Source: Epithemia pelagica
Taxonomy: Eukaryota; Protista; Bacillariophyta
NCBI GenBank assembly: GCA_946965045.2
Contig: OX337242.1
Location: forward strand, 2,542,001 to 2,606,000
Length of the DNA stretch: 64,000 bases
Direction of reading: 5' to 3'
The position numbers were made by a program, and so were the translations under genes. The notes below the pieces were generated by a model, which did no database searches, was not told where the DNA came from, and was given only the letters and a program-made list of their open reading frames with translations. Shown here piece after piece: positions 15,595 through 58,403 of the stretch; the stretch's first letter is position 1, and every line of letters begins with the position of its first letter.

Positions 15595-18500
15595 ATGAAC
15601 CAGTATCGAGAGGAATTCCTCAAGGGCTTTACGGAGCAGCGGTTTCCTCGCCAGGATGCCACACCACCCACGTACACCATTGGTGGTGCTCTCTTGTCGA
15701 TTGGCAGTTTACTCTTGCTGAGTGCGAGCAGTCTGTACATGGCGCAGCTCTTGAATCAGCCATCCGTGGCCTTTCATTTGACCAAAAATCAGGCCAATCG
15801 GTGCAGTGATCAGGACCCCGTCTTTGCCTCCCTCGTGTGTTATGTGGAACATGTCGTTTGCTTTTTTCCACACGTGTTGTACACGGAAGATACCAAGGCT
15901 CGATTCTTTGACGATTGCCACAAATCCGTCTTGGCGGGTTCCTATTCTACCGAGGAACCAGCTGGTGCTCTCTGGGGACTGCTGCCCTACTATTTTACGA
16001 TTTATGGTGCCACCTTGGGCTGCATCTTTGAACTGGGCTTGTTGTTGACGGGTCATGCCTTTCAACAATCGCTCAATCGGTATACCATTTACATTGTCCG
16101 ATTGCGATTGCTCAACATTGGCCCCGTTGTGGCGTCACTCTTCTTTTATGCCACGGCCCTCATGATCCCGACCAGTGATGTGCCCTTTCTCAAGATACTA
16201 CTCTACAGTGCCATTTTCATGGTCGTGGCCTTGTCTGTTGGTTTGTATTGGGGTGGATACCGAGTCTTGGGTGGGATGGACATGTTGCCCCTCGTTGTGT
16301 TGGGGATTCAAGTGGTGGAATTTCTCTTTGTGGTACGTATCGATATATATGTCTGTGTCTGCGAACAAGTGAACGAGAGAGGAACTGCTCACCTCGGTGT
16401 CTTTTGTTGTTGTTTGTGAAGATGACACGCGATCCGGTTGCGGGTGGCACGGCCGTCAAGTATACCTTGGCCCTGGCGCCCGTGTTTCAATTGTTGGCCT
16501 TTTTGCAAACCACGGAAACTCCCCTCCAGAGTTTTTGGTTTCATATGTTGAGTTCCATGGGAGCCGTGTGCCTGTATTTGGCTCTCATGTTGGCGGGCAA
16601 CAGTGGGGACGACACGATCGGGTATGCTGTGGAACAAGCCATTTTGTACAAGGAACCACACCAACGTCAATATCCCTATGTCCTCTTCACCATTGCGGTG
16701 GCCGTGTTTACAGTATTCAAAACCTTTCCGCTCCTGTATGAAACCTTTCGGTCGGAAATCAGCTACATGGTTTGGTCTCTCCTATACTTTATCTTGGTTG
16801 GAAATCCATCTCAACCGGCCCCCCAAGTCTCTGGGACAAGTCTACAAAACAGAAGCTCCCAAAACCGTCACCCTCCAACCCTATTCCGAGTCGCATCCCT
16901 ACCAAGTGGCCGCCAACATGGCCGTTCCGGCCATTACGAATGGTCTTCCACAGACAACCTTGGAAAATGCGGGTGCCCTTATCCAAAAGGTGACAAAACT
17001 ATTTGGTCTCATTGCCAAATTGGATCGGTTCCTTCCCCAAGCCAATATTGAAACACCCTTGAAATACAAGGTCCGACTGGGAGTGGCCGAAGATGGTCAA
17101 AAATGGTATCCCTCTGACGTCTTTTCCTTTCCCATTTTCCAGTTCCCGACCATGGGCAAGAAATTGCAGTATGCACCGCAACCTGCCGTGGATAGTTTCA
17201 AGGAAGGTCAATATCTGGCCTATCTTTGTCAATTTGGCATTGGCAATACCTTTCTGAAACGGGCCACAGAAACTGCATCCTATCCCTTTTTTTAACTGGT
17301 TGCATCGGACAAAAGTAGTAGTAGTAGAAGTAATGCTGCTGCGACAAAACCCGGATTGGTTGTGGACTTTCGTCCCTTGGAACAATACGAAGAAAAGGCG
17401 GACTATGAACCATATGGGGGTATTGCCTACTTTGTAGTCAACAAGAACAACAACTTGCAGCTCCAATGGGTCGTGACACCCCGTACCGAGGACAAGACCA
17501 TGTTGGATAAAAAAGACGCCACCTTTCGTCGGGCCGAGGCCATGATTGTATCGTCTCTTTACTTTTCGGTGGTTGCCGGCAAACATTTGGCCGAAATTCA
17601 CATGACGTATGTCTGTTTTGTCGCATGTTTTGTTTGGTTCTTCACGTGCCGCTGGAGACTAACCCTATTTGCTTGTTTTTCGACACTACTCACAGGTACA
17701 ACTTATTGGAGGTTGCCAACATTAACATGTTTGACCATGCCTTGAACTCGCGGAGGGGAACAAATGCTCAAGGTGGTTTGGATGACTTCAATGGTCACCC
17801 TCTCCGGGTCATGTTATACATTCACTTGTTTTCGCACGGCTTGGCCGAAGAACTCACGACGGAACACTTGGTGCAGGAAAATGCCGTCTTTTCTCAAGTG
17901 TTTTCCCTCAAATACGAGGCCCTCACCACCTACTTGACGGGCATTTACAACCGATTTACATTCGCGTCGGATGAAGATTTTGAAGAACGTGAAAGTGTCA
18001 ATCAGTTACTCACGGGGAATCCGGTTCTCGATTACGCCTCGAATCCGAGACCCCCTTTACCAATCAACTGCAATGGGAATCGGAATACTACGCGATTTTC
18101 CACGCCTACGCGAGCAAAATCCTGAGAGCCGTGTATCAGGGCAAGGATGAGAACGTGAGGAACGATGCGACATTGAAGAACTATTACCAAGCCTTGGAAG
18201 GATTTTTCCATACACTACCGACGCGTTACGACCAGTTTCAAACATTGAAGGGTGTCATTACCTTTGCGGCCGATTCCATTCATCATTTGGTGATTCGACA
18301 TCAGTTTTATGGGACCACAGCCATTGCCTCCGCCACGGACCCTCGATTGGGGAGCACGCAGACATGTAAGGACGGCGGCCCACCTGCCGTGGACGAATGG
18401 CGTTCTTTGGCCTATGTGGCCTTGGCCACAGCCTATGCCAACTTTGTTCATTTGGTGTACGATCCAGAGGATTATCCCGATGAAAATCCCAATGCTTCTG

Positions 18501-18775
18501 ATCCTCTTCTCAATGTCTTTGAAGACGCCACGCCTGTCCCACTCATTGCCGGTGAGCCGCCACTTACAAAAAGGAGACTGATTAGTACCATGAGGGAGGC
18601 TTGGGACACTATGCAAACCAAACTGAAAGACCTTCAAGTCCAGTGGACGTCGGCCAACAGATCCACATCAAATGATACCGATAGGGAACCCGACCGAAAC
18701 ATCTATCGGGAAGATGTCAATTACAGGTATTTCCGTCCCTTACCTTTTGACATTCACACGGGTCCAGGATACTGA
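15595..18775 (+). pseudogene. Multi-pass membrane protein fused to a lipoxygenase-like domain; disrupted as assembled
   Basis: Introns 16333-16421 and 17607-17695. LOX motifs FRRAEAMIVSS...KHLAEIH, HPLRVMLYIH and IHHLVIRHQF. Lesions: extra base in C6 (16819-24), in-frame TAA (17293-95), missing base near C5/T3 (18051-58). Confidence 0.7.
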
Positions 18776-19170
18776 ATGGAATGGAATGGAATGGAATCTA
18801 TGGGGAGGGATAGCAAGCTGTTTAACTGTAACCGGTGCAAAAGCCGCTCGTAATCGCAATCGTTGCCGCTTTATACGCCTTCATATCTTTCTGCTGTCCA
18901 AATATATCGCTATATTTCTCGCACGTTATCGATAGGTGACCGATGAGAAGTATTATTTTGTTCACCGGAAAATCTCAAAACAATCTGCGAGCCCGGCGTG
19001 CCTGCGAACAATAGTACTCTACACCCAATTCAACGTTTACCGTTACGGTTCAGTTCGCATCGCCAGAATCTACCTCCAAGACAAGATACCCATGGGCTTG
19101 GGACATCCATAATCCCTTTGGTCCGCTCCCGAAGAGTGAAACTCCTTACAGACAGTGCCAGGATAAGATC

Positions 19171-20025
19171 ATGTCCGGAAGAGGCAAAGGAGGCAAAGGT
19201 CTCGGCCCTGGTGGCACCGATAGAGGTGAAGACAGCGATCCCTTGACATTCATTATTATAATCGGCTTTATCTTTCTGGTGATTGGATTCTTGTCACGGC
19301 TACTTGGCCGACGTGCCAAACGCCGTTTGAATCCAGGAACTGGCGAGGCACAAAGCAAGTGCCATCTCTTTGCTTCGGATACAAAAGATCCAACACTTGG
19401 TCACATGAAGGATGAATCACCAAATGCTTCTCTCATTACCGTTCAGGCAACCTTTCAGGAAGTGATTGGTAGCATGGAAGACGGAACAAACTTTTCGTCC
19501 GATACTCTTCGAACCATGTACATTTCCTTATTGTCGGGTCTGGTAGATTCAGACAGTGAGGATCCACAAGACTTTGATATTGACCAAATGGTTGATGAGG
19601 CAATGCGTTTGATTGATACCAATCAAGATGGTACAATTGATTTGTCTGAAATGCAAAGCATTCAGTTGCCTCGTCAATCCGGAGAATTCATCTTTGACGA
19701 CGTGGTGGCCTGCTCCGACACGACCTCTTCTTCTTCCTTGACCGCATCGGGGGAAACTTGTGTCACGGCGGACCAGGTGGTGGACTTTCTCAATGTGTTC
19801 TATGGAGGAGCTCAAGTTGTGAGTCCCGAATTGGCCCAGCACATTCGAGAGACGAGTGGACCGGATACCTGTTATACACGAGCGGAATTTGATGCAGCTT
19901 TTTCCACTCCTTCTGGTGCCCTGTCGGCAGCCTTTTCGTTTTCGGGACCGGAACCTTCCTTCTTGTCCTTTGCCATTCATTTTGGAGCGGCCTTGCTAGT
20001 CTTTTGGTTGGCTTCTCCCTTTTAG
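19171..20025 (+). CDS. EF-hand/4-Cys membrane-anchored family member 1, with histone H4-like N-terminus
   Basis: 284-aa intronless ORF; [12 protein letters not shown]; TM helix; EF loop [12 protein letters not shown]; hydrophobic C-terminus; paralogous to three other ORFs in the window. Confidence 0.85.
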   Translation: [284 protein letters not shown]

Positions 20026-20280
20026 AGAAGACGCAATGAGAGTTACAATGTCCATGTCCTCCCCTTTTAGCGTTTTAGCCATTGTAGTCAACTGGACAGA
20101 ACGAGATTGGTAGATTGATTTCTTTAAGTTCGGTGTTATCTTTCTGCATTTTGTACAGGTAGATCTGTGTGGTTCATGTCGTTGAAGCGCCATCCGCTTT
20201 TCTAGTGCGCAAATCAGAGTCACCACATTGGAATGCTGTGACAATTGGACCTTTTCTTCCAATTCAAGACAAACAAGCGG

Positions 20281-21080
20281 ACGTTTCCAGGGTCATTCTT
20301 CCAGATGAGAACACTCCTCGGAGACTTGGAGTTTCATTGTCATTTCTGGGAGGACGCTTTCTTCGTGGTCTGGTTTTCATTGAATGCCAATCACGAGAAA
20401 AGAAAAAAATCCCGAAACAAGCAAGACACGTTGGTTCCACTGCGATAGCACAATCGGTTGGGAAGATGAGTGACTGTGTTCATTCCAAAAGTCTCAGTCG
20501 GTGAGGATCATGAAGAACACGATGAATGCGACACACAAAAGGAGTATTGAGTGAAGAAAGGATCGAGCGAAGCGAGTGTCAGTCTTCCCTTCTCTGACGC
20601 AAGTGCCGAACATGGAACATGGCACCCACTGAGGAACCTTCCTGCCTTGGAAAATGTTGAACTAGATGCAATTGTGTCTACCGTCAAGACGCCTTTTCTC
20701 CTGAACGTTGATCATCTGAAAAAGATCGTGTCTACTTGATCCAACGAGAGAATGAGTAGGCCATGCGGTGCCAGAGAATTAGGGTTCCAAGCCAGAAGAG
20801 CGGCAAAGCGTTTCCGTCGTTGGCTCTCGTCATCATTGTGATCGGTTCCCAGAACGATTTGAAGTTTCGCCCGGAGGACGTTGGCATCGCGCATGCATGG
20901 ATTTGTCACATGTACTATTACTTAGTCTTGGTGCTGAGTTGGGGCACTTGCGTGACACGCGTGCAAGCGCTCACATTCATTCCCGCTCACAAAATGACGC
21001 CATGGGACTGGAAACCTTAAAAATCAAGAGGGTACAACGGGAATTTGCCACTGCACTCGCCCTTGGACCATCTCGTCGTA
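20281..21080. repeat. Diverged dispersed repeat; second copy at ~31661-31962 plus 38593-39070, split by Copia-2
   Basis: Shared blocks such as gagacttggagtttcattgtc and acgccttttctc(c/a)tgaacgttgatcat...gaatgagtaggcca...ccagaagagcggcaaag. Confidence 0.7.
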
Positions 21081-21344
21081 TTCCACTTTGTTGGCCTCCC
21101 AACCCAACAAAGTACGATCGTGGAACCTCTTACGAGAGACCTGAATTCAACCACAGACCGCTGAGAGTCTCACCACTCGACCAAATCACGAAGGCAAAAG
21201 AAGGAAACACCTTCCATGTGAAGATCCCCTGATACTCATAGTAGCACCTAGAAACCGAGGTCTACGAGCGCACACTACCTAAGTTCCAGGTACGTAAGAA
21301 AACAAATAATATACTATGATTGAGCTTTTGCATAGAGTCTACTC

Positions 21345-22574
21345 TTAGTCAGTCCCAACACTTGGGTAGAAGGCCAAATTATTCTCCAAGCGCTGAACAT
21401 GATCTTTCGACAGTTCCAGTTCCTCGGCCCTTTCCAACAAAGTTGTGCATGCCCATCTTCCATCGTCCATCTGACCTGCATAGTATGCCAGCGTACACAG
21501 TTCATCAAGCAAAGTTGAGAGATGAGCGTCGACATTCACAAATAAGGAGTCATTTGGGCGTGGAATCTTGACGCCAATTGACGCAAAAATGTACCCCTTT
21601 ACCAAGTCATTCTTTCCATGAAAATATGAGGCCAACGCCAAGAGAGGTTCCACTCGACTAGGCCGCATTTGATAAGCCTTCAAGTAGGAACTGACAATGA
21701 GACCTTCATCAGCATTCATTCGCACATACGTTTGTCCAATCTGGTACTGAGCAAAGAATGTTTCTTGATCCCATCCTGGCATTTCGACACGCTTCTGAAA
21801 TGCTTCAAGTGCTTTTTCGTGATGCCCAGCGTCAAGATACGATTGTCCCAAATAGTACATACTTCGTGGATCGTAAGGATTCCGGACTAGATCTTCTTCC
21901 AATACCGAAGCATCACGCAAGAACTTTTCCTCGGTGGTTACGTTGACGGATCGTCCGCCTTCACCAATATTGACTTTGATATAGGCATCCTGTCGTACTT
22001 CGAACTCATGGTTCTCAGGCATAGCTTTATTCCATAAGTACTCGTGTACAACGCCTTCCCACTGCCAGCCATTGGATACTCCAATGTTGATTAGATTATG
22101 GAGGGGGTACCTCAAGCCGTATGACCGTTTCTCAAGTTCGTAGGACATGTTTGGCATAAGGGACTCTAAGAAAGAAGTTGCGTTTTCAACGACAAGCTCG
22201 TCATCGGCATCAATGAAGAGGGCCCACTGAGAATTGCAATGTTTCATGGCGAGCTCCAAGGCTTGTTGGCGATTGACACCAAAATTGACCCATTCCTGTT
22301 GATAGACTTGACCGTCAATTCCGTACCGATTCATCTCGATGGGAATTTGCTCAATTGTACCATCAGTTGAACCCGTATCCACAATCACATAATAATCAAT
22401 CACATCCTTCACAGACTCTATCAATCGAGGCATAACGTGAGCCTCGTTTTTCACAATCATGTTGAGGCAAATCCGACGACTGCCAGCGAATGTTTCCTTC
22501 ACGGCCAGTGACCATCCTTGTAGTCCCAGCATCACATGGAAGCAGAGGGAAGCAGTATACCTTAGAGTAATCAT
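21345..22574 (-). CDS. Family-2 glycosyltransferase with C-terminal TPRs
   Basis: CLNMIVKNE, IVDTGSTDGT, FIDADD (DXD), WEGVVHEYL, then TPR-like helices (YYLGQSYLDAG...). Intronless, with an N-terminal hydrophobic segment. Confidence 0.85.
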   Translation of the reverse strand: MITLRYTASLCFHVMLGLQGWSLAVKETFAGSRRICLNMIVKNEAHVMPRLIESVKDVIDYYVIVDTGSTDGTIEQIPIEMNRYGIDGQVYQQEWVNFGVNRQQALELAMKHCNSQWALFIDADDELVVENATSFLESLMPNMSYELEKRSYGLRYPLHNLINIGVSNGWQWEGVVHEYLWNKAMPENHEFEVRQDAYIKVNIGEGGRSVNVTTEEKFLRDASVLEEDLVRNPYDPRSMYYLGQSYLDAGHHEKALEAFQKRVEMPGWDQETFFAQYQIGQTYVRMNADEGLIVSSYLKAYQMRPSRVEPLLALASYFHGKNDLVKGYIFASIGVKIPRPNDSLFVNVDAHLSTLLDELCTLAYYAGQMDDGRWACTTLLERAEELELSKDHVQRLENNLAFYPSVGTD

Positions 22575-23670: not shown

Positions 23671-26025
23671 TTAGAAAGGAAGGCACAATCCAGAGACTGA
23701 AAACGCCGCTCCAACTCCAACGGAAGCGATGGCAAAGAAAAGATCGGGATACGTCGCAAAACCAGCCGACAATGTTTCGGAAGTGCCAAAGGCAGTCTCG
23801 AATTCGGCACGGGTGTAACAAGCATCAGGACCACTCATGTCCGCAATGTGCTGGGCCAAGCCAGTGCTAACAACTTCGGTACCACCATAGAACTGGTTGA
23901 GGAAGTCAACCACATTACCTGGCGTCACGCAGGCTTCGCCAGAAGAAGTCTTGAAGTTGGACAATGTACAAGCCACGACGTCATCGAAGAGGAACTCGCC
24001 ACTTTCGCGAGGAAGCTGGATACTTTCCATCTCCTTGACATCAATGATACCGTCTTTGTTCAGATCGATCGAGGCCAAAGTATCTTCCACCAAGCGTTCA
24101 ATATCCTCCTGCTTAGCAGTTCCATCTTCTTCATTGACGACAAGGCCTGACAACAAGGACGTGTAAAGGGACCAAAGCGTTTCCACGGAGAAATTGGTAC
24201 CTTGTTCCATGTGGGCCATGACATCTTGCAAATCCTTTTGCGCAACTGCTTCCTGGTTAACGGATCCCTTGGTTTGCAACACTTGGCACTCATTGCGGCC
24301 GTCGACAGCCACACGACGACGACGACGTCCACGACGACTACCACCCTTACCACCCTTACCACCATCCATCGAAAATATTTCAGGCAAGACAGCAAATGCA
24401 AGAAATAGCAGAAAGAACAACGGTCCAAGCAGGGCACCCACAGGAGGTAAACCAGGTAATCCAGTAAGACCAGTCGGACAACAGCCACCCGTAAGACCAC
24501 TCGGAGTAATAAAACAACAGGGACTTGGGCCACTTGGACCACTACCAGGACCGCTTGGACCACTACCAGGACCGCTTGGACCACTTCCACTTGGACCACT
24601 TCCACTTGGACCACTTCCACTTGGACCACTTCCACTCGGACCACTTCCACTTGGACCACTTCCACTTGGACCACTTCCACTCGGACCACTTCCACTCGGA
24701 CCACTACCGCTTGGACCACTTCCACTCGGACCACTACCGCTTGGACCACTACCGCTTGGACCACTTCCGCTTGGACCACTACCACTTGGGCCACTACCAC
24801 TTGGGCCACTACCACTTGGGCCACTACCACTTGGGCCACTTCCACTTGGACCACTTCCACTTGGACCACTTCCACTTGGACCACTTCCACTCGGACCACT
24901 TCCACTTGGACCACTTCCACTTGGACCACTTCCACTTGGACCACTTTCACTCGGACCACTTCCACTCGGACCACTACCGCTTGGACCACTACCGCTTGGA
25001 CCACTTCCACTCGGACCACTACCGCTTGGACCACTACCGCTTGGACCACTACCACTTGGGCCACTACCGCTTGGACCACTTCCACTTGGACCACTTCCAC
25101 TTGGACCACTTCCACTTGGACCACTTCCACTTGGACCACTTCCGCTTGGACCACTTCCACTCGGACCACTTCCACTTGGACCACTTCCACTTGGACCACT
25201 ACCGCTTGGACCACTACCACTTGGGCCACTTCCACTTGGACCACTTCCACTTGGACCACTTCCACTTGGACCACTTCCACTCGGACCACTTCCACTTGGA
25301 CCACTTCCACTTGGACCACTTCCACTTGGACCACTTTCACTCGGACCACTTCCACTCGGACCACTACCGCTTGGACCACTACCGCTTGGACCACTTCCAC
25401 TCGGACCACTACCGCTTGGACCACTACCGCTTGGACCACTTCCGCTTGGACCACTACCACTTGGGCCACTACCACTTGGGCCACTACCGCTTGGACCACT
25501 TCCACTTGGACCACTTCCACTTGGACCACTTCCACTTGGACCACTTCCACTTGGACCACTTCCGCTTGGACCACTTCCACTCGGACCACTTCCACTTGGA
25601 CCACTTCCACTTGGACCACTACCGCTTGGACCACTACCACTTGGGCCACTTCCACTTGGACCACTTCCACTTGGACCACTTCCACTTGGACCACTTCCAC
25701 TTGGACCACTTCCACTTGGACCACTTCCACTTGGACCACTTCCGCTTGGACCACTTCCACTCGGACCACTTCCACTTGGACCACTTCCACTTGGACCACT
25801 ACCGCTTGGACCACTTCCACTTGGACCACTACCACTTGGGCCACTTCCACTTGGACCACTTCCACTTGGACCACTTCCACTTGGACCACTTTCACCACTA
25901 CCAGGACCACTTTCACCACTATCAGGACCACTTGCACCACCATCGTGACCGGGCCATTCTCCCCCAGGCAGTTCACCCGTGATACCCGTGATACCCGAAG
26001 GGCCAATAGAAGTAAAGCCAGACAT
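23671..26025 (-). CDS. EF-hand/4-Cys family member 2 with long SGPSG repeat N-terminus (784 aa)
   Basis: Core matches member 1 (SLLSGLV, DLNKDGIIDVKE, LPRESGEFLFDDVVAC, CYTRAEF); variation among repeat units is almost all synonymous in this frame. Confidence 0.85.
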   Translation of the reverse strand: MSGFTSIGPSGITGITGELPGGEWPGHDGGASGPDSGESGPGSGESGPSGSGPSGSGPSGSGPSGSGPSGSGPSGSGPSGSGPSGSGPSGSGPSGSGPSGSGPSGSGPSGSGPSGSGPSGSGPSGSGPSGSGPSGSGPSGSGPSGSGPSGSGPSGSGPSGSGPSGSGPSGSGPSGSGPSGSGPSGSGPSGSGPSGSGPSGSGPSGSGPSGSGPSGSGPSGSGPSGSGPSESGPSGSGPSGSGPSGSGPSGSGPSGSGPSGSGPSGSGPSGSGPSGSGPSGSGPSGSGPSGSGPSGSGPSGSGPSGSGPSGSGPSGSGPSGSGPSGSGPSGSGPSGSGPSGSGPSGSGPSGSGPSGSGPSESGPSGSGPSGSGPSGSGPSGSGPSGSGPSGSGPSGSGPSGSGPSGSGPSGSGPSGSGPSGSGPSGSGPSGSGPSGSGPSGSGPSGSGPSGSGPSGSGPSGSGPSGSGPSGSGPSGSGPSGSGPSGPGSGPSGPGSGPSGPSPCCFITPSGLTGGCCPTGLTGLPGLPPVGALLGPLFFLLFLAFAVLPEIFSMDGGKGGKGGSRRGRRRRRVAVDGRNECQVLQTKGSVNQEAVAQKDLQDVMAHMEQGTNFSVETLWSLYTSLLSGLVVNEEDGTAKQEDIERLVEDTLASIDLNKDGIIDVKEMESIQLPRESGEFLFDDVVACTLSNFKTSSGEACVTPGNVVDFLNQFYGGTEVVSTGLAQHIADMSGPDACYTRAEFETAFGTSETLSAGFATYPDLFFAIASVGVGAAFSVSGLCLPF
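24525..25900 (-). repeat. Coding 15-bp tandem repeat (~87 units) with 180/390/420-bp higher-order blocks
   Basis: Unit ggaccacttccactt; 25081-25260 equals 25501-25680; the rare ccactttcac variant recurs 390 bp apart. Confidence 0.95.
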
Positions 26026-38273: not shown

Positions 38274-39155
38274 TCTTCGACGTTGAGCTCTTGTTTGAAC
38301 GATGGTAGCGAAATAACGGGGTGAGAGAGAAAGGAATCAGTTCGATCGCAGAGGAAGCGTGTGATATTTCTACTCTAGGTTCGTAGGAGCCGCTAAAGTA
38401 GGGGCGATGTTTCGTTTGTTTTGTTTATTATGAGCTTTCTACGGCTTAAAATGAACATAGGACAAGAAGGTATTCACCTGAGGCTTGCCTTGCAGATTGT
38501 CCTTGCAGTCGTAAAAATAACGAAGCGAACATGTAGATTGTATAGATAGTCTAGGTGACCGCAGTGCATGCTATGGTCCCTATATTGTCACATCAATGCC
38601 AAAGGAACCTGAACCAGATGATTGTAGATGTACCGTCAATACGCCTTTTCTCATGAACGTTGATCATTGATAAAGCTCGTGTCAGCTTCATCCAACGAAA
38701 GAATGAGTAGGCCAAGCGGGAGTCAGAGCATGAGGGTTCCAAACCAGAAGAGCGGCAAAGAGTTTTCCGTCGTGTCTGCTTCTGGTCATCATGGTGATTG
38801 GTTCAGGGAGGGTGGATTTGACGTTTCGCGACCCGGTTTTGTGGGGCGCGTGGCGGACGTTCTCATCGCGCGCGTGCATAGATTCGTCACATACACTAGA
38901 GGATTTAGTCGTGGTCCTGATGAGGAACATTTGACACGCGTGCCGTGGCTCTCAACGGATCACATTCACTCTCACAAAATGGCGCCATGGGACTGGAAGC
39001 ACCTCAAAAATCAAGGGTACAACGGACCCACCATTGGGAATTTGCCATTGCATTCGCCCTTGGACCATCTCATCGCAATTCACTTTGTTGGCTTTGCTTA
39101 GACATTCATTGAATCCATCAAGTCCTTTCCAAACCCCCTGTTCCAATTGCCGACC

Positions 39156-40673
39156 ATGAATGGCAGTTTCCGAGTGATGATATCGTCTCGCCCGCACCTT
39201 TTCCTACTACAGCTCCTGTTGCTGTGCCATGTCACACAATGGAGTGAGGCTCGCCATTGGACGGAGGTGGTGAATCCCATGGTCTACCGGTATCCCGGTT
39301 TGGATGCCGATCGATTCTTACTGAAACAAGAAGCCAATCCCTTGCAGTTTGCTGCCAGTGAACGATCCATGGCCCCATCGTCCTCTCCTTCGTCCTCGAC
39401 GTTAACGCCCACATCTTCCACCACCGCGACACCCACCACGACATCTCCCACCTCGACTGCACCGACTACAACAGCTCCCACCACCATGGTCTGTCCTCAT
39501 CCACAAAACGAACAAGGCTTTGAATTAAAACTCATGGATACTTGGGGTGATGGATGGGATTCCACTCGCATTGTCATTTTGGGTCCGTCGCCCATGGATG
39601 GTTCCGTAATGTCGCAACCCAATACGGCATCCACCATTCAGGAAACGCACACAGCCACGACAACCACAGCACCGGACGCAACCACGACCACTCAGGAGGG
39701 GGAGGGACCCACGACGACGGGGGATACCCCGGTCGATCCACAAGACTCGACGACTACCACCTTGTCTCAAGTGGTCACCCTCGAATTTCCCGATGCATCA
39801 CCACCAGAGTCACTCCCACCGTTCGATCCGTCCACCACATCGTGGATTCACACCACCGGGTCTTCCGTTGAGGTGGTCTTTAATGGAACCTTGGACAATG
39901 GTCATGTGGCCTTTCACCAGCTGTGTTTGCAACCTGACACGTGTTATCATGTGACTGTGGAAGGAGGGAATTGGGAACAAGATGTTTGTTGGGAACTTCG
40001 ATTGCCCTTTTTGGAATCCACCAATGCTATCCAACAACAACAACAAGGTGGAGGAGGAGACCCGACAGCGGCATCTGTCAATTACTTGTCCCTCGTCTCC
40101 AATGGATGGGCCCCGGTATCCTGTCAGTTCTCTTTTGGTCCCATTAGTGCCGATGATACCGTCTTGCAAGAGTCCACAGTCATTCATTGTCCCAATACCT
40201 GTCGTGGCGAATTGCGTCCGACAACGAGTCCCACCCAGGCTCCGACACAGACCACGGCTCCCACCACACCCAGTCCTTCGCGCAGGCCCACGCATACTCC
40301 CTCCGTATCGCCACCCAGTGCACTCCTTGACACATTATCCTCGACGAATCCAACACCGTCCCCCAGTAGGACCACATTGACACCATCGAATCGTCCCACC
40401 AGCGCACCCGTCCCAACTCCCGTGCCCACGCCGGCACCGCAACCGCGTCGATGGTGGGAAACCACCGACGATGGAGTCGTGGCCGCCACTCCCAGTGCCA
40501 CCACGGATGATGCCGTTGCCAGTCCCTCGGTATGGCTGACACCGGCCGGAGAATATTACTTTTATTATAGTCCGGCCATGTCACCTGCGGCCATGTCGGC
40601 CGAATGGACACCCTCCAGCGGTTGGGACTGGTGGTATCCAACGAGCCCGACGACGACCGCTGGTGGGGTTTGA
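39156..40673 (+). CDS. Secreted Thr/Ser/Pro-rich (mucin-like) protein
   Basis: Signal peptide (HLFLLQLLLLCHVTQWSEA); LMDTWGDGWD-containing Cys domain flanked by PT/TAPT repeats. Confidence 0.75.
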   Translation: MNGSFRVMISSRPHLFLLQLLLLCHVTQWSEARHWTEVVNPMVYRYPGLDADRFLLKQEANPLQFAASERSMAPSSSPSSSTLTPTSSTTATPTTTSPTSTAPTTTAPTTMVCPHPQNEQGFELKLMDTWGDGWDSTRIVILGPSPMDGSVMSQPNTASTIQETHTATTTTAPDATTTTQEGEGPTTTGDTPVDPQDSTTTTLSQVVTLEFPDASPPESLPPFDPSTTSWIHTTGSSVEVVFNGTLDNGHVAFHQLCLQPDTCYHVTVEGGNWEQDVCWELRLPFLESTNAIQQQQQGGGGDPTAASVNYLSLVSNGWAPVSCQFSFGPISADDTVLQESTVIHCPNTCRGELRPTTSPTQAPTQTTAPTTPSPSRRPTHTPSVSPPSALLDTLSSTNPTPSPSRTTLTPSNRPTSAPVPTPVPTPAPQPRRWWETTDDGVVAATPSATTDDAVASPSVWLTPAGEYYFYYSPAMSPAAMSAEWTPSSGWDWWYPTSPTTTAGGV

Positions 40674-41196
40674 GTTGGTTGAGGTTGTGTTGTCCCATGG
40701 AAAAGAAGGAGCAATTTCAAACTGTCGAGCACACAAGGAACAAAACGAGGGGAACAGAGCATGCCTCTGCAAACTTTTTCTACCTAGGTAGACAAACCAG
40801 CACAGTCTATTTAGAAAGCAACCAACTTCAAACAAGAATCTCTACCAACCATGTTGTCCGCACCTAGTGTCTAAAAGGCAGAGGGGAGGAAACCTGCACG
40901 AGAGAGGAAGCACTTGATCCCAACTCTCTCCATGGTTACAGATCGACATAACCAAAATGGGAAACACCTGACATGTCATCATCGGCTGATACTTAGAGTG
41001 GCAACAACAAACCGAGGTCTGTGCTAGCATAGACTATGGCCTTATTCTGTCCCAACGTGATCGGATGTAGACCCAAATGACCAAGTTCACCGCAAACTCT
41101 CAAATTGTCCAACAAGTCCACGAAACATCAAGTACGAAGTGGAGGCACAACCCGGAGGACAAAATAATGATACACATGAACAAAATGGCTCCACAG

Positions 41197-42498
41197 ATGA
41201 CGGTATTGATTCGACGGACGACGCAGCTGGAAAGGAAGACTGACATCCTGCTCCGAAAACAACCATGGAGAGTGCACGCTGCTGCCCGATTCTGGTCGAC
41301 TCTAGGAAATTGTGGGGTAGAGAAGGCCTCCTCATGGCGCAGTCCAAGGATCCGTGTTGGTCCGCCTGATTGTGGAATCCGTTGGGAATCTACCAACAAC
41401 GGCAACGGAGAGACAGTTTTGGACACAGAGGATAGTTCTGAAGACCATACCAATGTTGTGGAATCTTGGATGTCCACTAAGGACCGCCTGATATCCATGG
41501 AACCGGGAACTCTGAAACCAAAGCACTGGGCGGAAGCTGAGGAATTAATTAGTGCTTTACGAACAAACCCGAACCTATCCGACGAAGCGGTCCCGAGGCG
41601 AGTGGAGTACATGTTTGATGTTCCAGAACGACTCGCAGATGAAGTGGTAGAGCTCAAAGACAAAGCGTGGAATGAAAACAACGCTAGCTTCCCTAAGGTT
41701 GATCAAGAGATTCTAAATCAAGTATTGTTGACATGGCTTAACTTCATTCAATCAAAAAGCAAGTCGTCAAGAGACATAATGCATGCGAAGAACCAACATC
41801 GACGCCGACGAAACATGCATTCAAGCTTTGTCATATTCTCCCTTGGCTCTCTTGCCACTGACTCAATCATTGTCAAGGTTGAACGATTCTTCCAAGTTGG
41901 TTTATTTGAGGCAAACACGACTTCATATTTTATCGTACTCCGAGGAATGAACCTGGTGGACGATCCACAACAAGCCCCTCACCAGGCTCATAATATCTAC
42001 AATGGGATGATTGAAAAGAGCAAACACGATCCCTATGACACGTCATTTCATCCTGATAGACGAATTATCAACGTCATGGTTGAGATTTGGGCTCAGAGTT
42101 GGCTTCCCGAGGGTTGCAAAAGAGTGGAAGAATATCTCATGTCCTTGAAAGGCTGGTATGAGCAAACAAATCGTCCAGATCAGAGGCCCGATGCAGACAT
42201 GTACTGTGCGATTATGGAGTCTTACAGTCGATTGAGTGGGTCCCCAGGTGCATTGAAGCGGATTCAAGAATTGTTCTCCGAGATGAAAGAAAACATTTCT
42301 TTGTCTGAGAGGAGTGTCAGAATTTATAATCGTGTCTGTCGTGCCTTGACCGGATGTAAGTCAAAGGAAGCTGTTGGTGCCGCTCAGAAACTCCTTGACG
42401 AGATGTGCGTAGCCTTGATGAACAACAAAGGAAATATAGCGCCAGAGCCAGACACGGATACGTTCAGCACATTAATTGTCGCCCATGGACAACTGGGT
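41197..42498 (+). pseudogene. PPR protein, 5' part (organelle-targeted type), truncated
   Basis: PPR-like units (PDADMYCAIMESYS, PDTDTFSTLIVAHG); the frame runs into unrelated antisense AP-3 delta sequence at ~42500. Confidence 0.75.
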
Positions 42499-42504
42499 AA
42501 AGTT

Positions 42505-42756
42505 CAAGTAGCCAGTTCGTTTGTGGGCAAATCGTGGGCTGGACATGACTTCAATGGTCGCAAAACTGGCCCAGTTCATGGTGTATCCCATCATTTGGAG
42601 AAAGGTCAGCTTTTGCAAGGCGTTGGCCTTGACGTGCATATCGGCACTGGTCAATTCCGTCTTGATTTCCGCAATGCACTGACTAATAAAGAGCGCCGTG
42701 TCGCGTTTGGACGCGCGAATGCCTTTGACCACATCGGTTAAGGTCTTTTCAAACAT
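42505..42756 (-). pseudogene. AP3D1: AP-3 complex subunit delta, N-terminal fragment only
   Basis: MFEKTLTDVVKGIR...KANALQKLTFLQMMGY...IEVMSSPRFAHKRTGYL, then an abrupt end. Confidence 0.8.
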
Positions 42757-43068
42757 TGTCTTTAAGAACGCAATACGAAGGAAAGCCTTCGACAGTCTCT
42801 TTTTAAGGGTGTGGCAAGCCAAAGCTACAGGGAGCCTGGATCATTGTCACCGTGAGAAATGCATGGTAGGCGTCGAACGTCGAACCACAAAACTAAAAGC
42901 GACTATAAAGCGTCTCAAGAGACACTGGATGGGGGACGATGACGAATGACGAATGACCCATCGCTAATCGCGACTGACTCAAGATCGTCCGACACACCCA
43001 AAAGGATTCAAAAACCGCGCTCACAATTTTCGGTGGTCTCTTTCCATATTGCGAGTCACTCTTGGACA

Positions 43069-53646: not shown

Positions 53647-54564
53647 CTATTCCGGATGGGAGAGATCGAGCATCCACTGAACAGGACTTTGTGGTGTCGG
53701 TGAAGACGAGGAGGACAATCCACCGACAAAGAGAGCGGTTCCGACTCCAAACACGAGGATCAAGACAAAGGACGGATCGGCCTGCGCCGCAACGCCAGCC
53801 GACAAGGTTGTGCTGCTACCAAAGGCAGTTTCCCATTCGGCTCGTGTGTAGCATGCATCGACACCACTGGTATCCATAAGATGCTGCTTCAATTCGGAAC
53901 CGACAATCTCTTGGCCTCCATAAAATTGGTTCAAAAAGTCCACCACATTGGGAACCGACACACACGTTTCACCAGATGCGGTCGTGGTCGTGGTAGAAGT
54001 ACAGGCGACCACATCGTCAAACAAGAATTCTCCTGCTTCAGGCGGAAGCTGAATCATTTCCATTTCCTTGGCATTGATAATGCCATCTTGGTTGGTATCC
54101 ACAGTAGCAAGAGCCGTATCAATCAAAGTTTCAACATCCTCTTGAACACTTGCATCTTCTGTATCAACCAAACCAGACAACAACGAGAGGTACAGCGGAC
54201 GAAGAGTGTCGGTTGAGAAATCCGTGCGTTTCTCTATATGAGTGACAACATCTTGCAATTGCTGCGGAACAGGTGTCGATTCCGGAGTAGAGGCATTGTC
54301 GCCCGACATTTCGGATTCCTTGGCAGGAAGAAGGAGACATTGTCCCTCTGTTTCTTCTTGTGTCGTCGTCAAGGAACGTCGGGCAAGAAGACAAGGATTG
54401 ATAAAATGCCAATTCACGGGTGTACCCAACACCTTGCAGAGACCCTTAGCTAAGGATTCATTTCCACTCAAATCCAACAAGATGAATACGATATAAAGGA
54501 CAATTAAAAGGGGTGATTGTCTGACGGAATCAGCGGCAAGGGGGGTCAAGGACAGGACCAACAT
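53647..54564 (-). CDS. EF-hand/4-Cys family member 3
   Basis: TM helix; RRSL; EF loop DTNQDGIINAKE; GEFLFDDVVAC, GETCVS, DACYTRAE. Confidence 0.8.
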   Translation of the reverse strand: MLVLSLTPLAADSVRQSPLLIVLYIVFILLDLSGNESLAKGLCKVLGTPVNWHFINPCLLARRSLTTTQEETEGQCLLLPAKESEMSGDNASTPESTPVPQQLQDVVTHIEKRTDFSTDTLRPLYLSLLSGLVDTEDASVQEDVETLIDTALATVDTNQDGIINAKEMEMIQLPPEAGEFLFDDVVACTSTTTTTASGETCVSVPNVVDFLNQFYGGQEIVGSELKQHLMDTSGVDACYTRAEWETAFGSSTTLSAGVAAQADPSFVLILVFGVGTALFVGGLSSSSSPTPQSPVQWMLDLSHPE

Positions 54565-55367
54565 GGTGATGGTTTGGTTGTTGCCCTTTGTGGTATCCGA
54601 GATTCTGGATCCAAGCACCTCCGTGTGACAAGACGCCACAACTACTTATTCATCGACACGCGAGCTGTGTCCTCATTGGTGATTGGCGATGGCGGTCGTT
54701 GCTTAGGTATCACAAATCACAACATGGTGGATTTGGAAGTTGGAAGCCACATGCATGGAAGGAAGGAATGTATGGGAAAAACCTGTGAGACCACCCTCTT
54801 CAACTAGCACACACTATGTTGAATTGACCTAACGACAAGAGGCAACGAAACTGGGAACCGGCGAAAGGAAGGAAGAACGTCCATGGTGGTTGTGTTTCTC
54901 GTTGCTGGCATGTAACCTTATTCATCGCCACCGCCCCTGGGCACGCGCGATGCTGTTCCGGCATTAAAAGTCGCTTATAAGTCGCTTATAATGACTCGAT
55001 TATTCACCGCTTCTGCGACCTCTAATTAGTGCGACCATTTTTTCATTCCTGAGCACGACTCATCAACCTCTATGGAGGTAGCCCAATAAACGCTAGAGCT
55101 ATTACTCCTCCTTACACAAAGTTTCTTTCTGGTCCTGCCTTTTCCCTCTTTTGTATCGCAGTGGAAGTTCGCAACTTGTGTTCTCCAACTTCCTCCTGTT
55201 GTCTCCCTACAAAAGGTAACTAGTTTTCACATAACATGGAACTACTTTGGTATAATTAATGAAGTTTCCTAACTACGGAATCGAATTGAAAGCGCAGCAT
55301 GGAGAGAATCAATCGGACATGCAGATTTTGATCATTGTGCTGACCATGGTGTGGATCATCTTGTCAT

Positions 55368-56367
55368 TTAGAAAGGAAGAGCCAATCCGGAGACAAAGAA
55401 GGCCGTTCCGACACCAAAGGCAGCGCTCAAGACAAAGGAAAGATCGGGCATGGTCGCATATCCAGCCGACAAGGTCTCAGCGTCGCTAAAGGCAGACTCA
55501 AACTCGGCATGGGTGAAGCACGCATTGGGTCCACTCTGTTCGACAATCTTCTGGGCCAAGTCCGCACCAACAACCTCGCTACCCGCGTAGAACTCGTTGA
55601 GCAAGGTGATTACATTGTCCGGAGTGACACAAGTTTCACCATTGGCAGAAGTAGTGGGAGCAGTGCACTCGACAACGTCCTCGAAAAGGAACTCACCGGC
55701 TTCACGAGGAAGCTGCATGCCTTCGATTTCGAGCATATCAATCTTGCCGTCTCCATTCGCATCAATGGCCATCAAAGTGTCTTCGACCAAAAGTTCAATG
55801 TCTACTTGAGTGGTATCATCTTCTTCATCGACCACCAAACCGGACAACAAAGACACGTAAAGGGAACGAAGGGTGTCAACCGAGATATCGGTCTGATCTT
55901 CCATGTTCTTCATAATTTCTTCCAGGTCTTGTTGAGAAGCAGCCGATTGCGTGGCATCGGCGGCAGCATCTTCGGCAGCTCCCTTGGATTCAAAAAGTTG
56001 GCACTGGCCCTGTCCGTTGGCGGCCAAATCACGGTTTCCTGTGTTTCTCTTCTGTTTCCTTGCTGCTTTGTTTTTGGTTCCTGATTTCTACCACCCAGTC
56101 TCTTTTTTCACAAGTTTGTACGTGGTCCTTCCCATAAATTTCTTCATCCACTTAAAGGCCGTATGGTTCTTCGTCATGCGGAACCAAGACATGAGAAAAA
56201 TCAGCAGCATCATCAAAGCCGAATCATAGGGCCAGTTGCCGTGTTTACCACTACCGCTTTGATCAACACCGGATTGTTCCAAGGCGTGGGTGCGGCAACC
56301 TGAGTTGCGGCAACCTCGAAAGCAACGGGAGCAGCGACAGGAGCGGCCATGATAAGAATACGACGGT
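55368..56367 (-). pseudogene. EF-hand/4-Cys family member 4; in-frame TAG at 56088-90 and 5' end cut by Copia-3
   Basis: ORFs 56088-56444 and 55368-56027 share a frame; EF loop DANGDGKIDMLE; upstream TM helix ALMMLLIFLMSWF. Confidence 0.7.
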
Positions 56368-58403
56368 GGGCGGAGGAGGTGCTTCGAATTGCCTAACTGG
56401 TCCAATTGTGAGACCATGAGGAGAAATTTCTCGACCTCATCCATCCATCACGCATCCAGCGATCGATCCAACTGTTAGAATTCTCACCGTCTATGGTGGT
56501 TAGATTCTACATCTCATCGATTCCCCATGTCACATAGCCCCGTGCTATCGCATCATGCCACCTAGCTTCGAGCTATGTTCCCTAGCTTTGCGCTATATCG
56601 ACCTATATTTCTTCGCAAATCATGAAAAGTGAGAATAGATTGACAAACTCACTCTCAAGACTAAACTGGGTCGTGCGGTATTACAACGGACGCAAATTTG
56701 GCCGTTGCTTGGACATTATACTAGTGCCCTAAGCGTACGCGCCCGAAATCATCGAGCGCGCCCAAGCGACATCCGAGCGCCGTCGGCATCTATCCGACCC
56801 AACGGTCTAAGTATCCCAAGCACGACACACGATCACGCGAGACCATATTTCCATTCCCACAATCTCCAAATTGTCAACAAGCTGCGCGCCATGAAAACAA
56901 CGATGCCAATCCAAAGCAAGAGCTGTTGACCCTGTATATGTTATCCGTCCACATATACATGTCATATACATCACATGAATCAACTCCAACTATTCCAAAC
57001 CTGTTGCCGCCAAGAACCTATGACACACGACCCTTGGCAGGACCGAACATTTCACGTAGACCTATCGTAGTAATCAACACACAATCTAACAATATCACCA
57101 TTTATCACATCCTCTTTTGTGTCCCGACTATCCTGTTGATAGACTACGACTTGCTTTCCTCTATACCCGTGGAGAGGTTTGTATCGGTTGGTGACTACCT
57201 GATTGTCTGCTCGACCGAGCATCAACGCCACTGCAATTCCAAGAGAATTGTAATAGATTAACAGTCTCAGAGCTTATTTCCTTGTGGTTTCATGGATACT
57301 AACAAGCTTATCACTCCTGTACGACAGATTTATCGAGCCAACCTGCATTCCGGGCAGCCCGATACCCTGGTGCAGCAGGAACTGGTGCCGACGCCGAAGG
57401 CAGCCAACACATCGGTCAACATCTCCGTCGACAGTTCCAACAGCAACCCATTCGAGACTCCAACCCAGCCTCACGCTCCGATCCCTGCGCCGTTGCTTCA
57501 GCCCCCGAGTCCGCCTCGTCGGCTCGTCCCTTCTCGATCCCGTCATACCACCCGGTTGATTGCTGATCATGTCAAGTACTTCCGTCAACCAACTTGTTCG
57601 ACCTTCGATCCCGAGATCATCCGTGGGGAGACCCAGATCGAACGCCAGTTCCAATCGGTGACCCACATCGTCGACCAAGAAGACATTGAACGTCTGAACG
57701 ACCAACTTCATCGCTCTCCGAGGCGTCGCCTCATCTTGGCCGCCCTCTAGGGCAACCCCTAGGGCAACCCCATCCGTACTGTCCACCTCCGCTTCCTAAC
57801 CTTCGAGCGCCCAACTGGATACTACAATACCATCTACGTCGTGAACGCGACGACTTGCCCTCTGCCTCCTAACGTTGTACGCCTAGATAACTACGTTGCC
57901 TACATCCACGAGGTCCATACCATCGAGGACCATCGTGCAACTATCTTCCCTTTGCGTGCCGAGGCCGAGAACCACTTGGCTGAAGGTGATACCCCTTCTT
58001 CTGTTGCTTGTGCTGCCCCATCTGAGCCTGGAAACGACTCTGATTATTCGGAAGAAAGTGGAGATTTGGAAACCCAAGCTTAATTACTCATAGTTAACTC
58101 CCGTCCTCTCAAAACCTTTCCAAGACTTATACTCAACGCACATCCGGGTACCCTTGGTCGCACAACACGCCACACATTCCCGTCAAATCGCGAAAATTCG
58201 GCAAAAATTTGTTGAAACTCGGCGAAAATTTGTCGGAATCAACGGAAATTTCCAGGAGTCGCACATCACAACACTCATCCGGGTATCACATACGTGGTAC
58301 ATACGTGGCACACGTGGTACATCCGGGTTCACATCACATCACACATTAAATAAACCACATCCCACCGCACATTAAATAAACATCGAACCAACCAAATAAC
58401 ACC

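What the first reader, a model, noticed from the sequence alone, without database searches (positions are those of the whole stretch)
19171..19224. Histone H4 tail mimic at the N-terminus of a membrane protein
Seen: the ORF starts [19 protein letters not shown], followed by a TM helix, with no histone fold. Known: H4 starts [18 protein letters not shown], so 14 of the first 17 residues match in register from the free N-terminus, differing only at K12P, A15T and K16D. SGRGK is the recognition site for NatD/Naa40 and PRMT1/5 (R3), and K5/K8 are acetylation sites. Inference: either capture of an H4 5' end by gene fusion or selected histone mimicry, such as a decoy or substrate for histone modifiers at a membrane. 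Caveat: KGGK is also a diatom KXXK-type motif and appears in paralogue 2 (GGKGGKGG), so partial convergence is possible. The exact MSGRG...LG match goes beyond that.
Basis: partly seen in the sequence, partly recalled or inferred. Interest (0 to 1): 0.75.

Follow-up and report, generated by a model that had tools for sequence, protein, structure and literature searches.

The report
Histone H4 start on membrane protein
A probably transcribed gene for a membrane-bound calcium-binding protein in a probable diatom begins with 12 residues identical to the start of histone H4, too exact for chance. The tail is unique to this one family member, and nothing here shows that it works as a histone mimic.

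Summary
ORF 19171-20025 (+, 284 aa) starts [12 protein letters not shown], identical to H4 through G11 and matching 14 of the first 17 residues. A very hydrophobic segment, one canonical EF-hand and a hydrophobic C-terminus follow. There is no histone fold.

- **Start codon:** 19171 is the first in-frame ATG after a stop. A contig from a run with gene-limited cover (probably RNA) spans 19128-19669 without a difference.
- **Chance:** about 1e-9 to 3e-8 even with the family's own G/K-rich composition.
- **Family:** about 27 relatives, apparently all from this one assembly, and none of them has the tail. The other haplotig keeps it, with two synonymous changes.
the scan noted this family before, 162 kb downstream (s1-238980), but not the H4 tail.
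- **Origin:** unresolved. H4 genes of other diatoms match the 36 nt no better than background (26-30 of 36 against a mean of 28.5). This genome's own H4 gene could not be fetched.
- **Mimicry:** untested and partly disfavoured. K12, K16 and the basic patch are gone, and the flanking charges predict that the tail faces away from the cytosol.

My best reading is a chimeric N-terminal module taken from an H4 5' end, with no demonstrated histone-like function.

The parts
19128..19170 (+). 5' leader without an ATG, inside the probable RNA contig
   Evidence: Record 22 of run X4 covers 19128-19669 with 0 differences. X4 has zero depth in the intergenic bins 18806-19073 and 20816-21351. Sequence read.
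19171..19206 (+). Start codon plus 11 codons identical in protein to histone H4 residues 1-11 ([12 protein letters not shown])
   Evidence: Unique in the window within 3 mismatches. Two synonymous and no replacement differences in the other haplotig.
19207..19242 (+). Gly/acidic linker P13-P24 ([12 protein letters not shown]). Only G14, G15 and R18 still match H4. It resembles the Pro/acidic flank that precedes the anchor in paralogues.
19243..19293 (+). Very hydrophobic segment L25-L41 (signal-anchor or signal peptide core)
   Evidence: Kyte-Doolittle 3.28 over 15 aa. Predicted helix 24-47 in the AF2 model, at low confidence.
19297..19329 (+). Basic juxtamembrane stretch R43-L53 holding the family-conserved [KR]-R-x-L motif
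   Evidence: In alignments A2/A3 a juxtamembrane Arg (R51 or R52) is invariant or nearly so. Net +6 over the 15 residues after L41, counted by eye from the sequence, with slightly different segment bounds, gives +4. RXL domains of diatom secretory proteins: PMC5525289.
19591..19659 (+). Canonical EF-hand (loop D149-E160)
   Evidence: Pfam EF-hand_1, 25.8 bits against a cut-off of 25.4. D149, N151, D153, G154, I156 and E160 are invariant in the family.
19957..20013 (+). Weakly hydrophobic G/A-rich C-terminal segment with 3 aa after it, preceded by a conserved small-residue motif (LSAA): either a GPI-attachment-like signal or a tail anchor
19171..20025 (+). Whole intronless coding sequence, 284 aa (P0001)
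23671..26025 (-). Paralogue 2: a long SGPSGSGP repeat, a hydrophobic segment, then a G/K module (24313-24369) and poly-Arg, then the EF-hand domain
53647..54639 (-). Paralogue 3 of the same family
55368..56072 (-). Paralogue 4 of the same family (P0011 is the exact product of ORF 55368-56027)

Best explanation
The ORF is a real, probably transcribed, intronless gene. It encodes one member of a family of small membrane-bound EF-hand proteins found only in this assembly.

Family layout: a variable N-terminal module, then a very hydrophobic anchor or signal segment, then a basic [KR]RxL stretch, then a four-EF-hand-like domain with one working loop and four conserved cysteines, then a hydrophobic C-terminus.

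In this paralogue alone, the N-terminal module is the start codon plus 11 codons that encode H4 residues 1-11. I read this as a chimeric 5' end: a short piece of an H4 coding start was joined to the gene and now supplies its initiation codon (inferred, not shown). It would be one of the family's interchangeable N-terminal modules.

The tail is a 24-residue flexible stub ahead of the anchor. After removal of the initiator Met, the nascent chain would expose SGRG, the motif that NAA40/NatD recognises co-translationally on H4 and H2A. N-terminal acetylation is therefore plausible (inferred).

Nothing indicates that the tail acts as a histone mimic. It lacks K12, K16 and the basic patch. Depending on topology, it is either moved to the non-cytosolic side or is the n-region of a signal sequence that may be cut off.

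Shown: the sequence identity, its non-random nature, the start codon and probable transcript, the family anatomy, and the uniqueness of the tail. Inferred: origin by capture, N-terminal processing, and lack of mimic function.
For: - Identity to H4 1-11 and 14 of 17. Chance 1e-9 to 3e-8 even with the family's composition.
- First in-frame ATG. A probable RNA contig runs colinear over 19128-19669 and another over 19728-20059, both with 0 differences.
- The other haplotig copy (P0009, L002) keeps the tail with 2 synonymous and 0 replacement changes in codons 1-20. The whole gene has 8 synonymous and 8 replacement codon differences.
- An exhaustive profile search of 1.84 billion representatives found about 27 true relatives. 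Every one whose source was looked up is from ENA, and several share contigs of this assembly. None starts with SGRGK, and their N-terminal modules all differ: Pro-rich, SGP repeat, a signal-peptide-like start plus an extra domain, or short.
- Known histone mimics are 4-6 residues long, for example GK-X-GK in Twist and FOXO3a (PMC6281582). An 11-residue exact match in register with the Met fits descent better than convergence.
- NAA40 specificity for the Ser-Gly-Arg-Gly start, and its co-translational action: abstracts of PMC12265263 and PMC12992615.
Against: - There is no DNA-level trace of capture. Ten H4 genes from four diatom genome assemblies match the 36 nt at 27-30 of 36, and six diatom-type metagenomic H4 genes at 26-30. 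The mean over 122 H4 starts of all kinds is 28.5 and the maximum 33. The 20 nt upstream match 5-9 of 20.
- The tail uses AGA for Arg4 and AAA for both Lys. Nine of the ten diatom genome H4 genes use CGT or CGC for that Arg.
- No histone relic lies nearby, and no histone 3' stem-loop.
- Diatom H4 introns are not at a position that would allow exon-1 shuffling.
- The family has its own G/K-rich modules next to the anchor, so a home-grown origin is possible.
- If the capture is old, keeping 11 of 11 residues while the synonymous sites scrambled would imply selection on the tail. That argues against 'no function'.
Confidence: 0.45

Rival explanations
1. Home-grown low-complexity origin. The tail arose from the family's own G/K/R-rich juxtamembrane module, which consists of short 9-nt repeats encoding G-G-K. 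It drifted, or was mildly selected, into the H4 sequence. The likeness to H4 is convergent and has no histone-related meaning.
For: G/K modules sit beside the hydrophobic segment in paralogue 2 (MDGGKGGKGG, then poly-Arg), P0013 (GGNGKGGKDKGK) and P0015 (SGKGSGKGKNK). By eye, the P0013 module already matches H4 1-11 at 7 of 11 positions, and paralogue 2 shares M-x-G..GKGGKG with the tail. Both the tail and the paralogue 2 module are internally repeated 9-nt units. The DNA is no closer to diatom H4 genes than background.
Against: Even with the family's G/K/R composition, an exact 11-mer has probability about 1e-9, and at least 14 of 17 about 3e-8. Leu is almost absent from those modules. The modules lie after the anchor, not before it. 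No third-position agreement links the tail with the paralogue 2 module.
Confidence: 0.2
2. Selected histone-tail mimicry. The tail faces the cytosol, either as a type II anchor or as a signal-peptide n-region released after cleavage. It is kept because it is a substrate or decoy for enzymes that act on new H4 (NatD, arginine methyltransferases at R3, acetylation at K5/K8), or because it binds H4-tail readers.
For: Residues 1-11 hold the NatD motif SGRG, R3, and the GK-X-GK pair K5/K8 that bromodomain proteins read when acetylated. There are no replacement changes in codons 1-20 between haplotigs against two synonymous ones. The synonymous sites look scrambled relative to diatom H4 genes while the protein is exact, as expected under purifying selection. 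Four conserved Cys and a GPI-like C-terminus suggest that the EF-hand domain is lumenal, which would leave the N-terminus cytosolic.
Against: The tail occurs in only one of about 14 loci of a family confined to this assembly, with no orthologue elsewhere. K12, K16 and the basic patch are lost. The expected number of replacement changes in 20 codons between the haplotigs is only about 0.6, so their absence proves nothing. The flanks are acidic before and strongly basic after the anchor, and the anchor is very hydrophobic; both predict that the N-terminus is translocated. P0019 has a signal-peptide-like start and an extra domain before the anchor, which again puts N-terminal modules outside the cytosol.
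Confidence: 0.1
3. Extracytosolic cationic stub. The N-terminus is translocated (type III anchor), and the G/K tail works outside the cytosol, for example at the cell surface or in a silica-forming compartment, like the Lys-rich motifs of diatom wall proteins. Its likeness to H4 is irrelevant to its role.
For: The charge difference across the anchor. A conserved [KR]RxL motif like the RXL domain of diatom biosilica-associated proteins. An earlier, unchecked note that the family clusters around a silicon transporter (s1-238980).
Against: The tail has only two Lys, far from a pentalysine cluster. The tail is net neutral overall. No silica link was tested here. This reading does not explain the exact H4 identity.
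Confidence: 0.15
4. The tail is not part of the protein. Translation starts downstream, or the ORF is not expressed.
For: Run X4 is not on record as RNA, and contigs cannot show a true 5' end. In the other haplotig the native upstream region is replaced by a truncated copia fragment from 6 nt before the ATG.
Against: The next in-frame Met is M79, which would delete the hydrophobic segment, the RxL motif and conserved C64 that all relatives keep. X4 cover is gene-limited and includes 19128-19669 exactly. There is no upstream in-frame ATG.
Confidence: 0.05

Closest known systems
Histone H4 N-terminal tail (residues 1-18)
   Same: Residues 1-11 are identical and in register with the initiator Met. 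G13, G14 and R17 also match. The SGRG start, R3, K5 and K8 are retained.
   Different: There is no histone fold. K12 is Pro, A15 is Thr, K16 is Asp and H18 is Gly, so the K12 and K16 acetylation sites and the basic patch are lost. A hydrophobic membrane segment follows.
Short histone-mimic motifs in non-histone proteins (for example the H4-like GK-X-GK of Twist and FOXO3a, PMC6281582)
   Same: The tail contains the same GKGGK unit as H4 K5/K8.
   Different: Known mimics are 4-6 residues long, internal, and sit in nuclear proteins whose binding to readers has been shown. Here the match is 11 residues at the free N-terminus of a membrane or secretory protein, with no functional data.
Diatom secretory proteins with a signal peptide followed by an RXL domain (silaffins, cingulins, Silicanin-1; PMC5525289)
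   Same: A hydrophobic N-terminal segment is followed by a conserved [KR]RxL motif (KRRL here), with Cys-containing domains behind it.
   Different: The motif lies 2-12 residues after the hydrophobic core rather than about 30. The core is long and very hydrophobic, like an anchor. There is no silica-related composition, and association with silica was not tested.
Four-EF-hand calcium sensors (calmodulin, CDPK calmodulin-like domain, calcineurin B, NCS-1)
   Same: One canonical EF-hand loop. The helix-loop-helix pattern repeats four times. All top Foldseek matches are four-EF-hand proteins.
   Different: The matches are weak (E 0.01-0.1, TM 0.2-0.35, model pLDDT 61). Three loops are degenerate, and two of them carry conserved Cys. 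The protein has hydrophobic segments at both ends, and no relatives were found outside this assembly.

Membership tests
Histone H4 | Histone fold domain | tested here: not met
   The Pfam scan finds only EF-hand families. PDB hits cover residues 1-19 only.
Histone H4 | Complete N-terminal tail, including K12, K16 and the K16-R19 basic patch | tested here: not met
   Residues 1-11 are identical, but K12P, A15T, K16D and H18G differ.
Functional histone mimic | Bound or modified by histone readers or writers in the same compartment | not testable with these tools
   This needs biochemistry. Topology predictions conflict.
NatD (NAA40) substrates | N-terminus Ser-Gly-Arg-Gly after removal of the initiator Met | tested here: met
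   Met only at the sequence level: the protein starts M-S-G-R-G-K. The motif is from the abstracts of PMC12265263 and PMC12992615. Whether this organism has NAA40 was not tested.
Chimeric gene with a captured H4 5' end | DNA similarity to a donor H4 gene beyond what the protein match requires, ideally running into the 5' leader | tested here: inconclusive
   Not met against other diatoms and metagenomic H4 genes: 26-30 of 36 against a background mean of 28.5, and 5-9 of 20 upstream. The genome's own H4 gene could not be fetched.
EF-hand proteins | Canonical 12-residue calcium-binding loop flanked by helices | tested here: met
   EF-hand_1, 25.8 bits against a cut-off of 25.4, at aa 141-163. 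The loop residues are invariant in the family. The fold search returns only EF-hand proteins, weakly.
Diatom RXL-domain secretory proteins | Cleavable ER signal peptide followed by a stretch ending in R-X-L | tested here: inconclusive
   The [KR]RxL motif is conserved. Whether the hydrophobic segment is a cleaved signal or an anchor could not be decided, because no signal-peptide predictor was available. The flanking charges argue for an anchor with the N-terminus outside.
GPI-anchored proteins | N-terminal signal plus a C-terminal small-residue attachment site, a spacer and a hydrophobic end | tested here: inconclusive
   By inspection only. A conserved [LI]S[AG][GA] motif lies 25-30 aa from the end, followed by a weakly hydrophobic G/A-rich tail with 0-7 residues after it. 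This conflicts with the charge rule at the N-terminal segment.

The most novel reading that the evidence does not exclude
The exact H4(1-11) N-terminus is kept by selection on a cytosol-facing stub or on a released signal-peptide fragment. At the ER surface it would act as a membrane-tethered substrate or decoy for the enzymes that process newly made H4 (NatD, R3 methylation, K5/K8 acetylation), or as bait for H4-tail readers. That would link a calcium-binding secretory-pathway protein to the histone supply or to chromatin signalling in a diatom.
Probability: 0.08. Interest if true: 0.75.

Novelty: new variant of a known kind. Interest (0 to 1): 0.4.

Why it matters
If the tail is only a captured gene start, it is a clean natural example of a new N-terminus assembled from a fragment of a core histone gene. 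It would sit in a young, fast-diversifying family whose N-terminal modules are swapped freely.

If the genome's own H4 gene turns out not to match at the DNA level, the exact 11-residue identity would have to be maintained by selection. That would make it by far the longest H4-tail mimic known, and the first on a membrane or secretory protein.

The family itself is undescribed and, in the databases searched, confined to this one assembly. Its members have an EF-hand, four conserved Cys and hydrophobic segments at both ends.

Tried and rejected
**Attempts to compare the tail with H4 genes**
- An exact 36-mer scan of metagenome contigs gave 0 hits.
- A degenerate H4-start scan gave 122 H4 starts, none closer than 33 of 36.
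- I tried to fetch this genome's own H4 gene by exact-protein look-up with the diatom-type H4 and a second variant (that variant turned out to include a Bathycoccus assembly by accession, my own recognition). Only other assemblies were shown.
- A detour through H2B gave 7,998 hits and none could be assigned to this assembly.
- A findings look-up by sequence was blank, which means little.

**Other tests**
- Exon-1 shuffling: rejected. Introns of diatom H4 genes lie after codon 44 or near the 3' end.
- H2A as the donor: rejected. Diatom H2A starts MSGKGKGGRGG.
- Histone relics or a histone 3' stem-loop near the gene: none.
- DNA homology between the tail and the G/K module of paralogue 2: none beyond the amino-acid constraint.
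- Extra depth from H4 genes over 19171-19206 in the DNA runs: none seen. This is a weak test, because a 36-nt match may be too short to be laid.
- The bacterial promoter and terminator scan is irrelevant for a eukaryote.
- The ESM Atlas look-up gave only generic EF-hand clusters below 0.8.
- The full-length AF2 model was poor (pLDDT 52.5).

Full report
**Observation**

The window holds an 855-nt ORF at 19171-20025 on the + strand. Its product (P0001, 284 aa) begins [24 protein letters not shown].

- A phmmer search of the first 30 residues against all PDB sequences returned only histone H4 chains (E 0.004-0.01). The alignment shows residues 1-12 identical, plus G14, G15 and R18.
- Pfam finds no histone domain. 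It finds only one EF-hand (EF-hand_1, aa 141-163, 25.8 bits against a cut-off of 25.4).
- L25-L41 is very hydrophobic (Kyte-Doolittle 3.3 over 15 aa). The last 20 residues are weakly hydrophobic, with only three residues behind them.

**Is the start real?**

- The nearest upstream in-frame stop is at 19012-19014, and there is no in-frame ATG before 19171.
- The next in-frame Met is M79. Starting there would remove the hydrophobic segment, the basic motif and the first conserved cysteine, all of which the relatives keep.
- Four public runs hold the locus. Three have even cover, like DNA.
- The fourth, X4, has zero depth in the intergenic bins 18806-19073 and 20816-21351 but exact contigs over 19128-19669 and 19728-20059.
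- I take X4 for RNA, although its record does not say so. Contigs cannot show a true 5' end.
- The leader 19128-19170 has no ATG. The tail, the hydrophobic segment and the following 120 codons lie on one colinear contig, so there is no intron there.

**More than chance?**

With a generic amino-acid composition, an exact match to H4 residues 1-11 has probability about 1.6e-13. With the composition of the family's own G/K/R-rich modules it is about 1e-9, and at least 14 of 17 in register is about 3e-8. Chance is not a serious explanation, even allowing for the size of this scan.

**What the protein is**

- The window has three paralogues, at 23671-26025, 53647-54639 and 55368-56072, all on the minus strand.
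- The word search found seven relatives, and an exhaustive profile search of 1.84 billion representatives found about 27.
- Every one whose source was looked up comes from ENA, and several share contigs (for example the 521,466-nt contig) of one assembly.
- The family therefore appears confined to this organism, at roughly 14 loci in two haplotypes. I did not verify the taxon myself. Earlier notes of this scan call it diatom-like.
- The alignments show the following layout:
  - a variable N-terminal module;
  - a Pro followed by a 17-22-residue very hydrophobic segment;
  - a basic stretch with a conserved [KR]-R-x-L motif;
  - four conserved cysteines (C64, C181, C197, C234);
  - one canonical EF-hand loop and three degenerate helix-loop-helix units;
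  - a conserved small-residue motif [LI]S[AG][GA] 25-30 residues from the end;
  - a G/A-rich hydrophobic C-terminus.
- An AF2 model of residues 56-262 reached pLDDT 61 and pTM 0.57. All of its best Foldseek matches in the PDB are four-EF-hand proteins (calmodulin, CDPK calmodulin-like domains, calcineurin B, NCS-1), but weakly (E 0.01-0.1).

**Is the tail shared?**

No. None of the relatives begins with SGRGK. Their N-terminal modules are all different:
- a 7-residue stub (P0010);
- a Pro-rich stretch (P0003);
- a repeat of about 500 aa, SGPSGSGP (paralogue 2 in the window);
- a signal-peptide-like start with an extra domain (P0019).

This agrees with an earlier first-reader note on the same family 162 kb downstream ('interchangeable N-terminal modules', s1-238980). 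Its claim of clustering around a silicon transporter I did not test.

The only other copy of the tail is on the second haplotig (P0009 on L002).
- Across the CDS the two differ at 17 of 855 nt: 8 synonymous and 8 replacement codon differences.
- Codons 1-20 carry two synonymous and no replacement changes. With only about 0.6 replacements expected there, this says little about selection.
- Homology between the haplotigs begins just 6 nt before the ATG. Upstream, L002 carries a truncated copia polyprotein fragment on the opposite strand.
- A further haplotype seen in the DNA runs does share the window's upstream region, with indels.

**Origin**

I tested the capture idea as far as the tools allowed.
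- The exact 36-mer is absent from the metagenome collection.
- Among 122 H4 gene starts from metagenomes, identity to the 36 nt has a mean of 28.5 and a maximum of 33.
- The diatom-type H4 protein occurs in Phaeodactylum tricornutum (I recognise accession GCA_000150955.2 as that species; the tool gave no name) and three other assemblies.
- Those ten H4 genes match the tail at 27-30 of 36 and the 20 nt upstream at 5-9 of 20, which is background. Six diatom-type H4 genes from metagenomes match at 26-30.
- The tail uses AGA for Arg4, whereas nine of those ten genes use CGT or CGC.
- Introns of diatom H4 genes lie far from codons 12-18, so exon shuffling through an existing intron is not supported.
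- Diatom H2A starts MSGKGKGGRGG and is a worse match.
- No histone relic and no histone 3' stem-loop lie near the gene.
- The decisive comparison is with this genome's own H4 genes. I could not make it, because the look-ups returned only other assemblies.

The family also has G/K-rich modules of its own, placed after the hydrophobic segment: MDGGKGGKGG then poly-Arg in paralogue 2, GGNGKGGKDKGK in P0013, and SGKGSGKGKNK in P0015. A home-grown origin is therefore conceivable. It does not remove the 1e-9 improbability, and the DNA of the two modules agrees only where the amino acids force it.

**Topology and function**

The evidence conflicts.

For a translocated N-terminus (type III anchor, EF-hand domain in the cytosol):
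- The flank before the anchor is acidic, and the 15 residues after L41 carry net +6 by my count. One search, with slightly different segment bounds, gives -1 before and +4 after. The anchor is long and very hydrophobic.
- P0019 places a signal-peptide-like start and an extra domain before the anchor.

For a lumenal or extracellular domain, with a cytosolic or cleaved N-terminus:
- Four conserved cysteines, two of them at equivalent positions of paired EF-hand-like loops.
- A C-terminus built like a GPI attachment signal.

I cannot decide between these without a predictor or an experiment.

In either case the nascent chain would, after Met removal, expose SGRG. That is the motif that makes H4 and H2A the specific, co-translational substrates of NAA40 (abstracts of PMC12265263 and PMC12992615). 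N-terminal acetylation is thus a reasonable inference.

A role as decoy or substrate for other histone enzymes is unsupported. K12, K16 and the basic patch are gone, the tail is not conserved in the family, and half of the topology evidence places it outside the cytosol.

**Comparison with what is known**

Known H4 mimics are short internal motifs in nuclear proteins, such as GK-X-GK in Twist and FOXO3a (PMC6281582). Here 11 residues match at a free N-terminus of a membrane or secretory protein. The gene is not a histone. It is an EF-hand protein of an undescribed family found in only one assembly.

**Verdict**

- The most economical reading is a chimeric N-terminal module derived from an H4 coding start, with no demonstrated histone-like function (confidence about 0.45).
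- The rivals are a home-grown low-complexity origin, selected mimicry, an extracytosolic role, and a wrong start.
- The finding is a curiosity of moderate interest. It would become considerably more interesting if the genome's own H4 gene fails to match at the DNA level, because the exact identity would then need selection to explain it.

Noticed in passing
window 23671-26025 (-): Paralogue 2 is a 784-aa ORF. Its first roughly 500 residues are an almost perfect SGPSGSGP repeat. The counterpart on the other haplotig (P0003, 283 aa) has only a 35-aa Pro-rich N-terminus instead.
   Followed up: partly
L002 9300-10000, against window 19165: Homology between the two haplotigs starts only 6 nt before the ATG. 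Upstream, L002 has a truncated copia polyprotein fragment on the minus strand with no LTR, so that allele has lost the window-type promoter region. A copia like window 38610-43004 is inserted about 600 nt downstream of the L002 gene.
   Followed up: partly
P0019 (an ENA contig; the assembly was not looked up): This family member has a classic signal-peptide-like start and an extra Cys-containing domain of about 130 aa before the hydrophobic segment. If the gene call is right, N-terminal modules of the family are extracytosolic and the EF-hand domain is cytosolic.
   Followed up: no
P0008 (on the 521,466-nt contig that also holds L002): A 70-aa fragment copy of this same paralogue (EF-hand region only) lies on the other haplotig's contig. 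This points to a partial duplicate or pseudogene.
   Followed up: no
window 18766-18804: A (GGAAT)n microsatellite lies directly after the stop of the upstream lipoxygenase-like ORF. The reads tool skipped it as a repeat.
   Followed up: no
window 17600-18775: In the probable RNA run X4, the upstream lipoxygenase-like gene at this locus has no exact cover. Only contigs about 85% identical are laid there, so a paralogue rather than this copy seems to be expressed.
   Followed up: no
window 53647-56072 (-): Two family paralogues lie in tandem about 730 nt apart, and a weak further match lies at 56732-56935. This is a local tandem expansion of the EF-hand family.
   Followed up: partly
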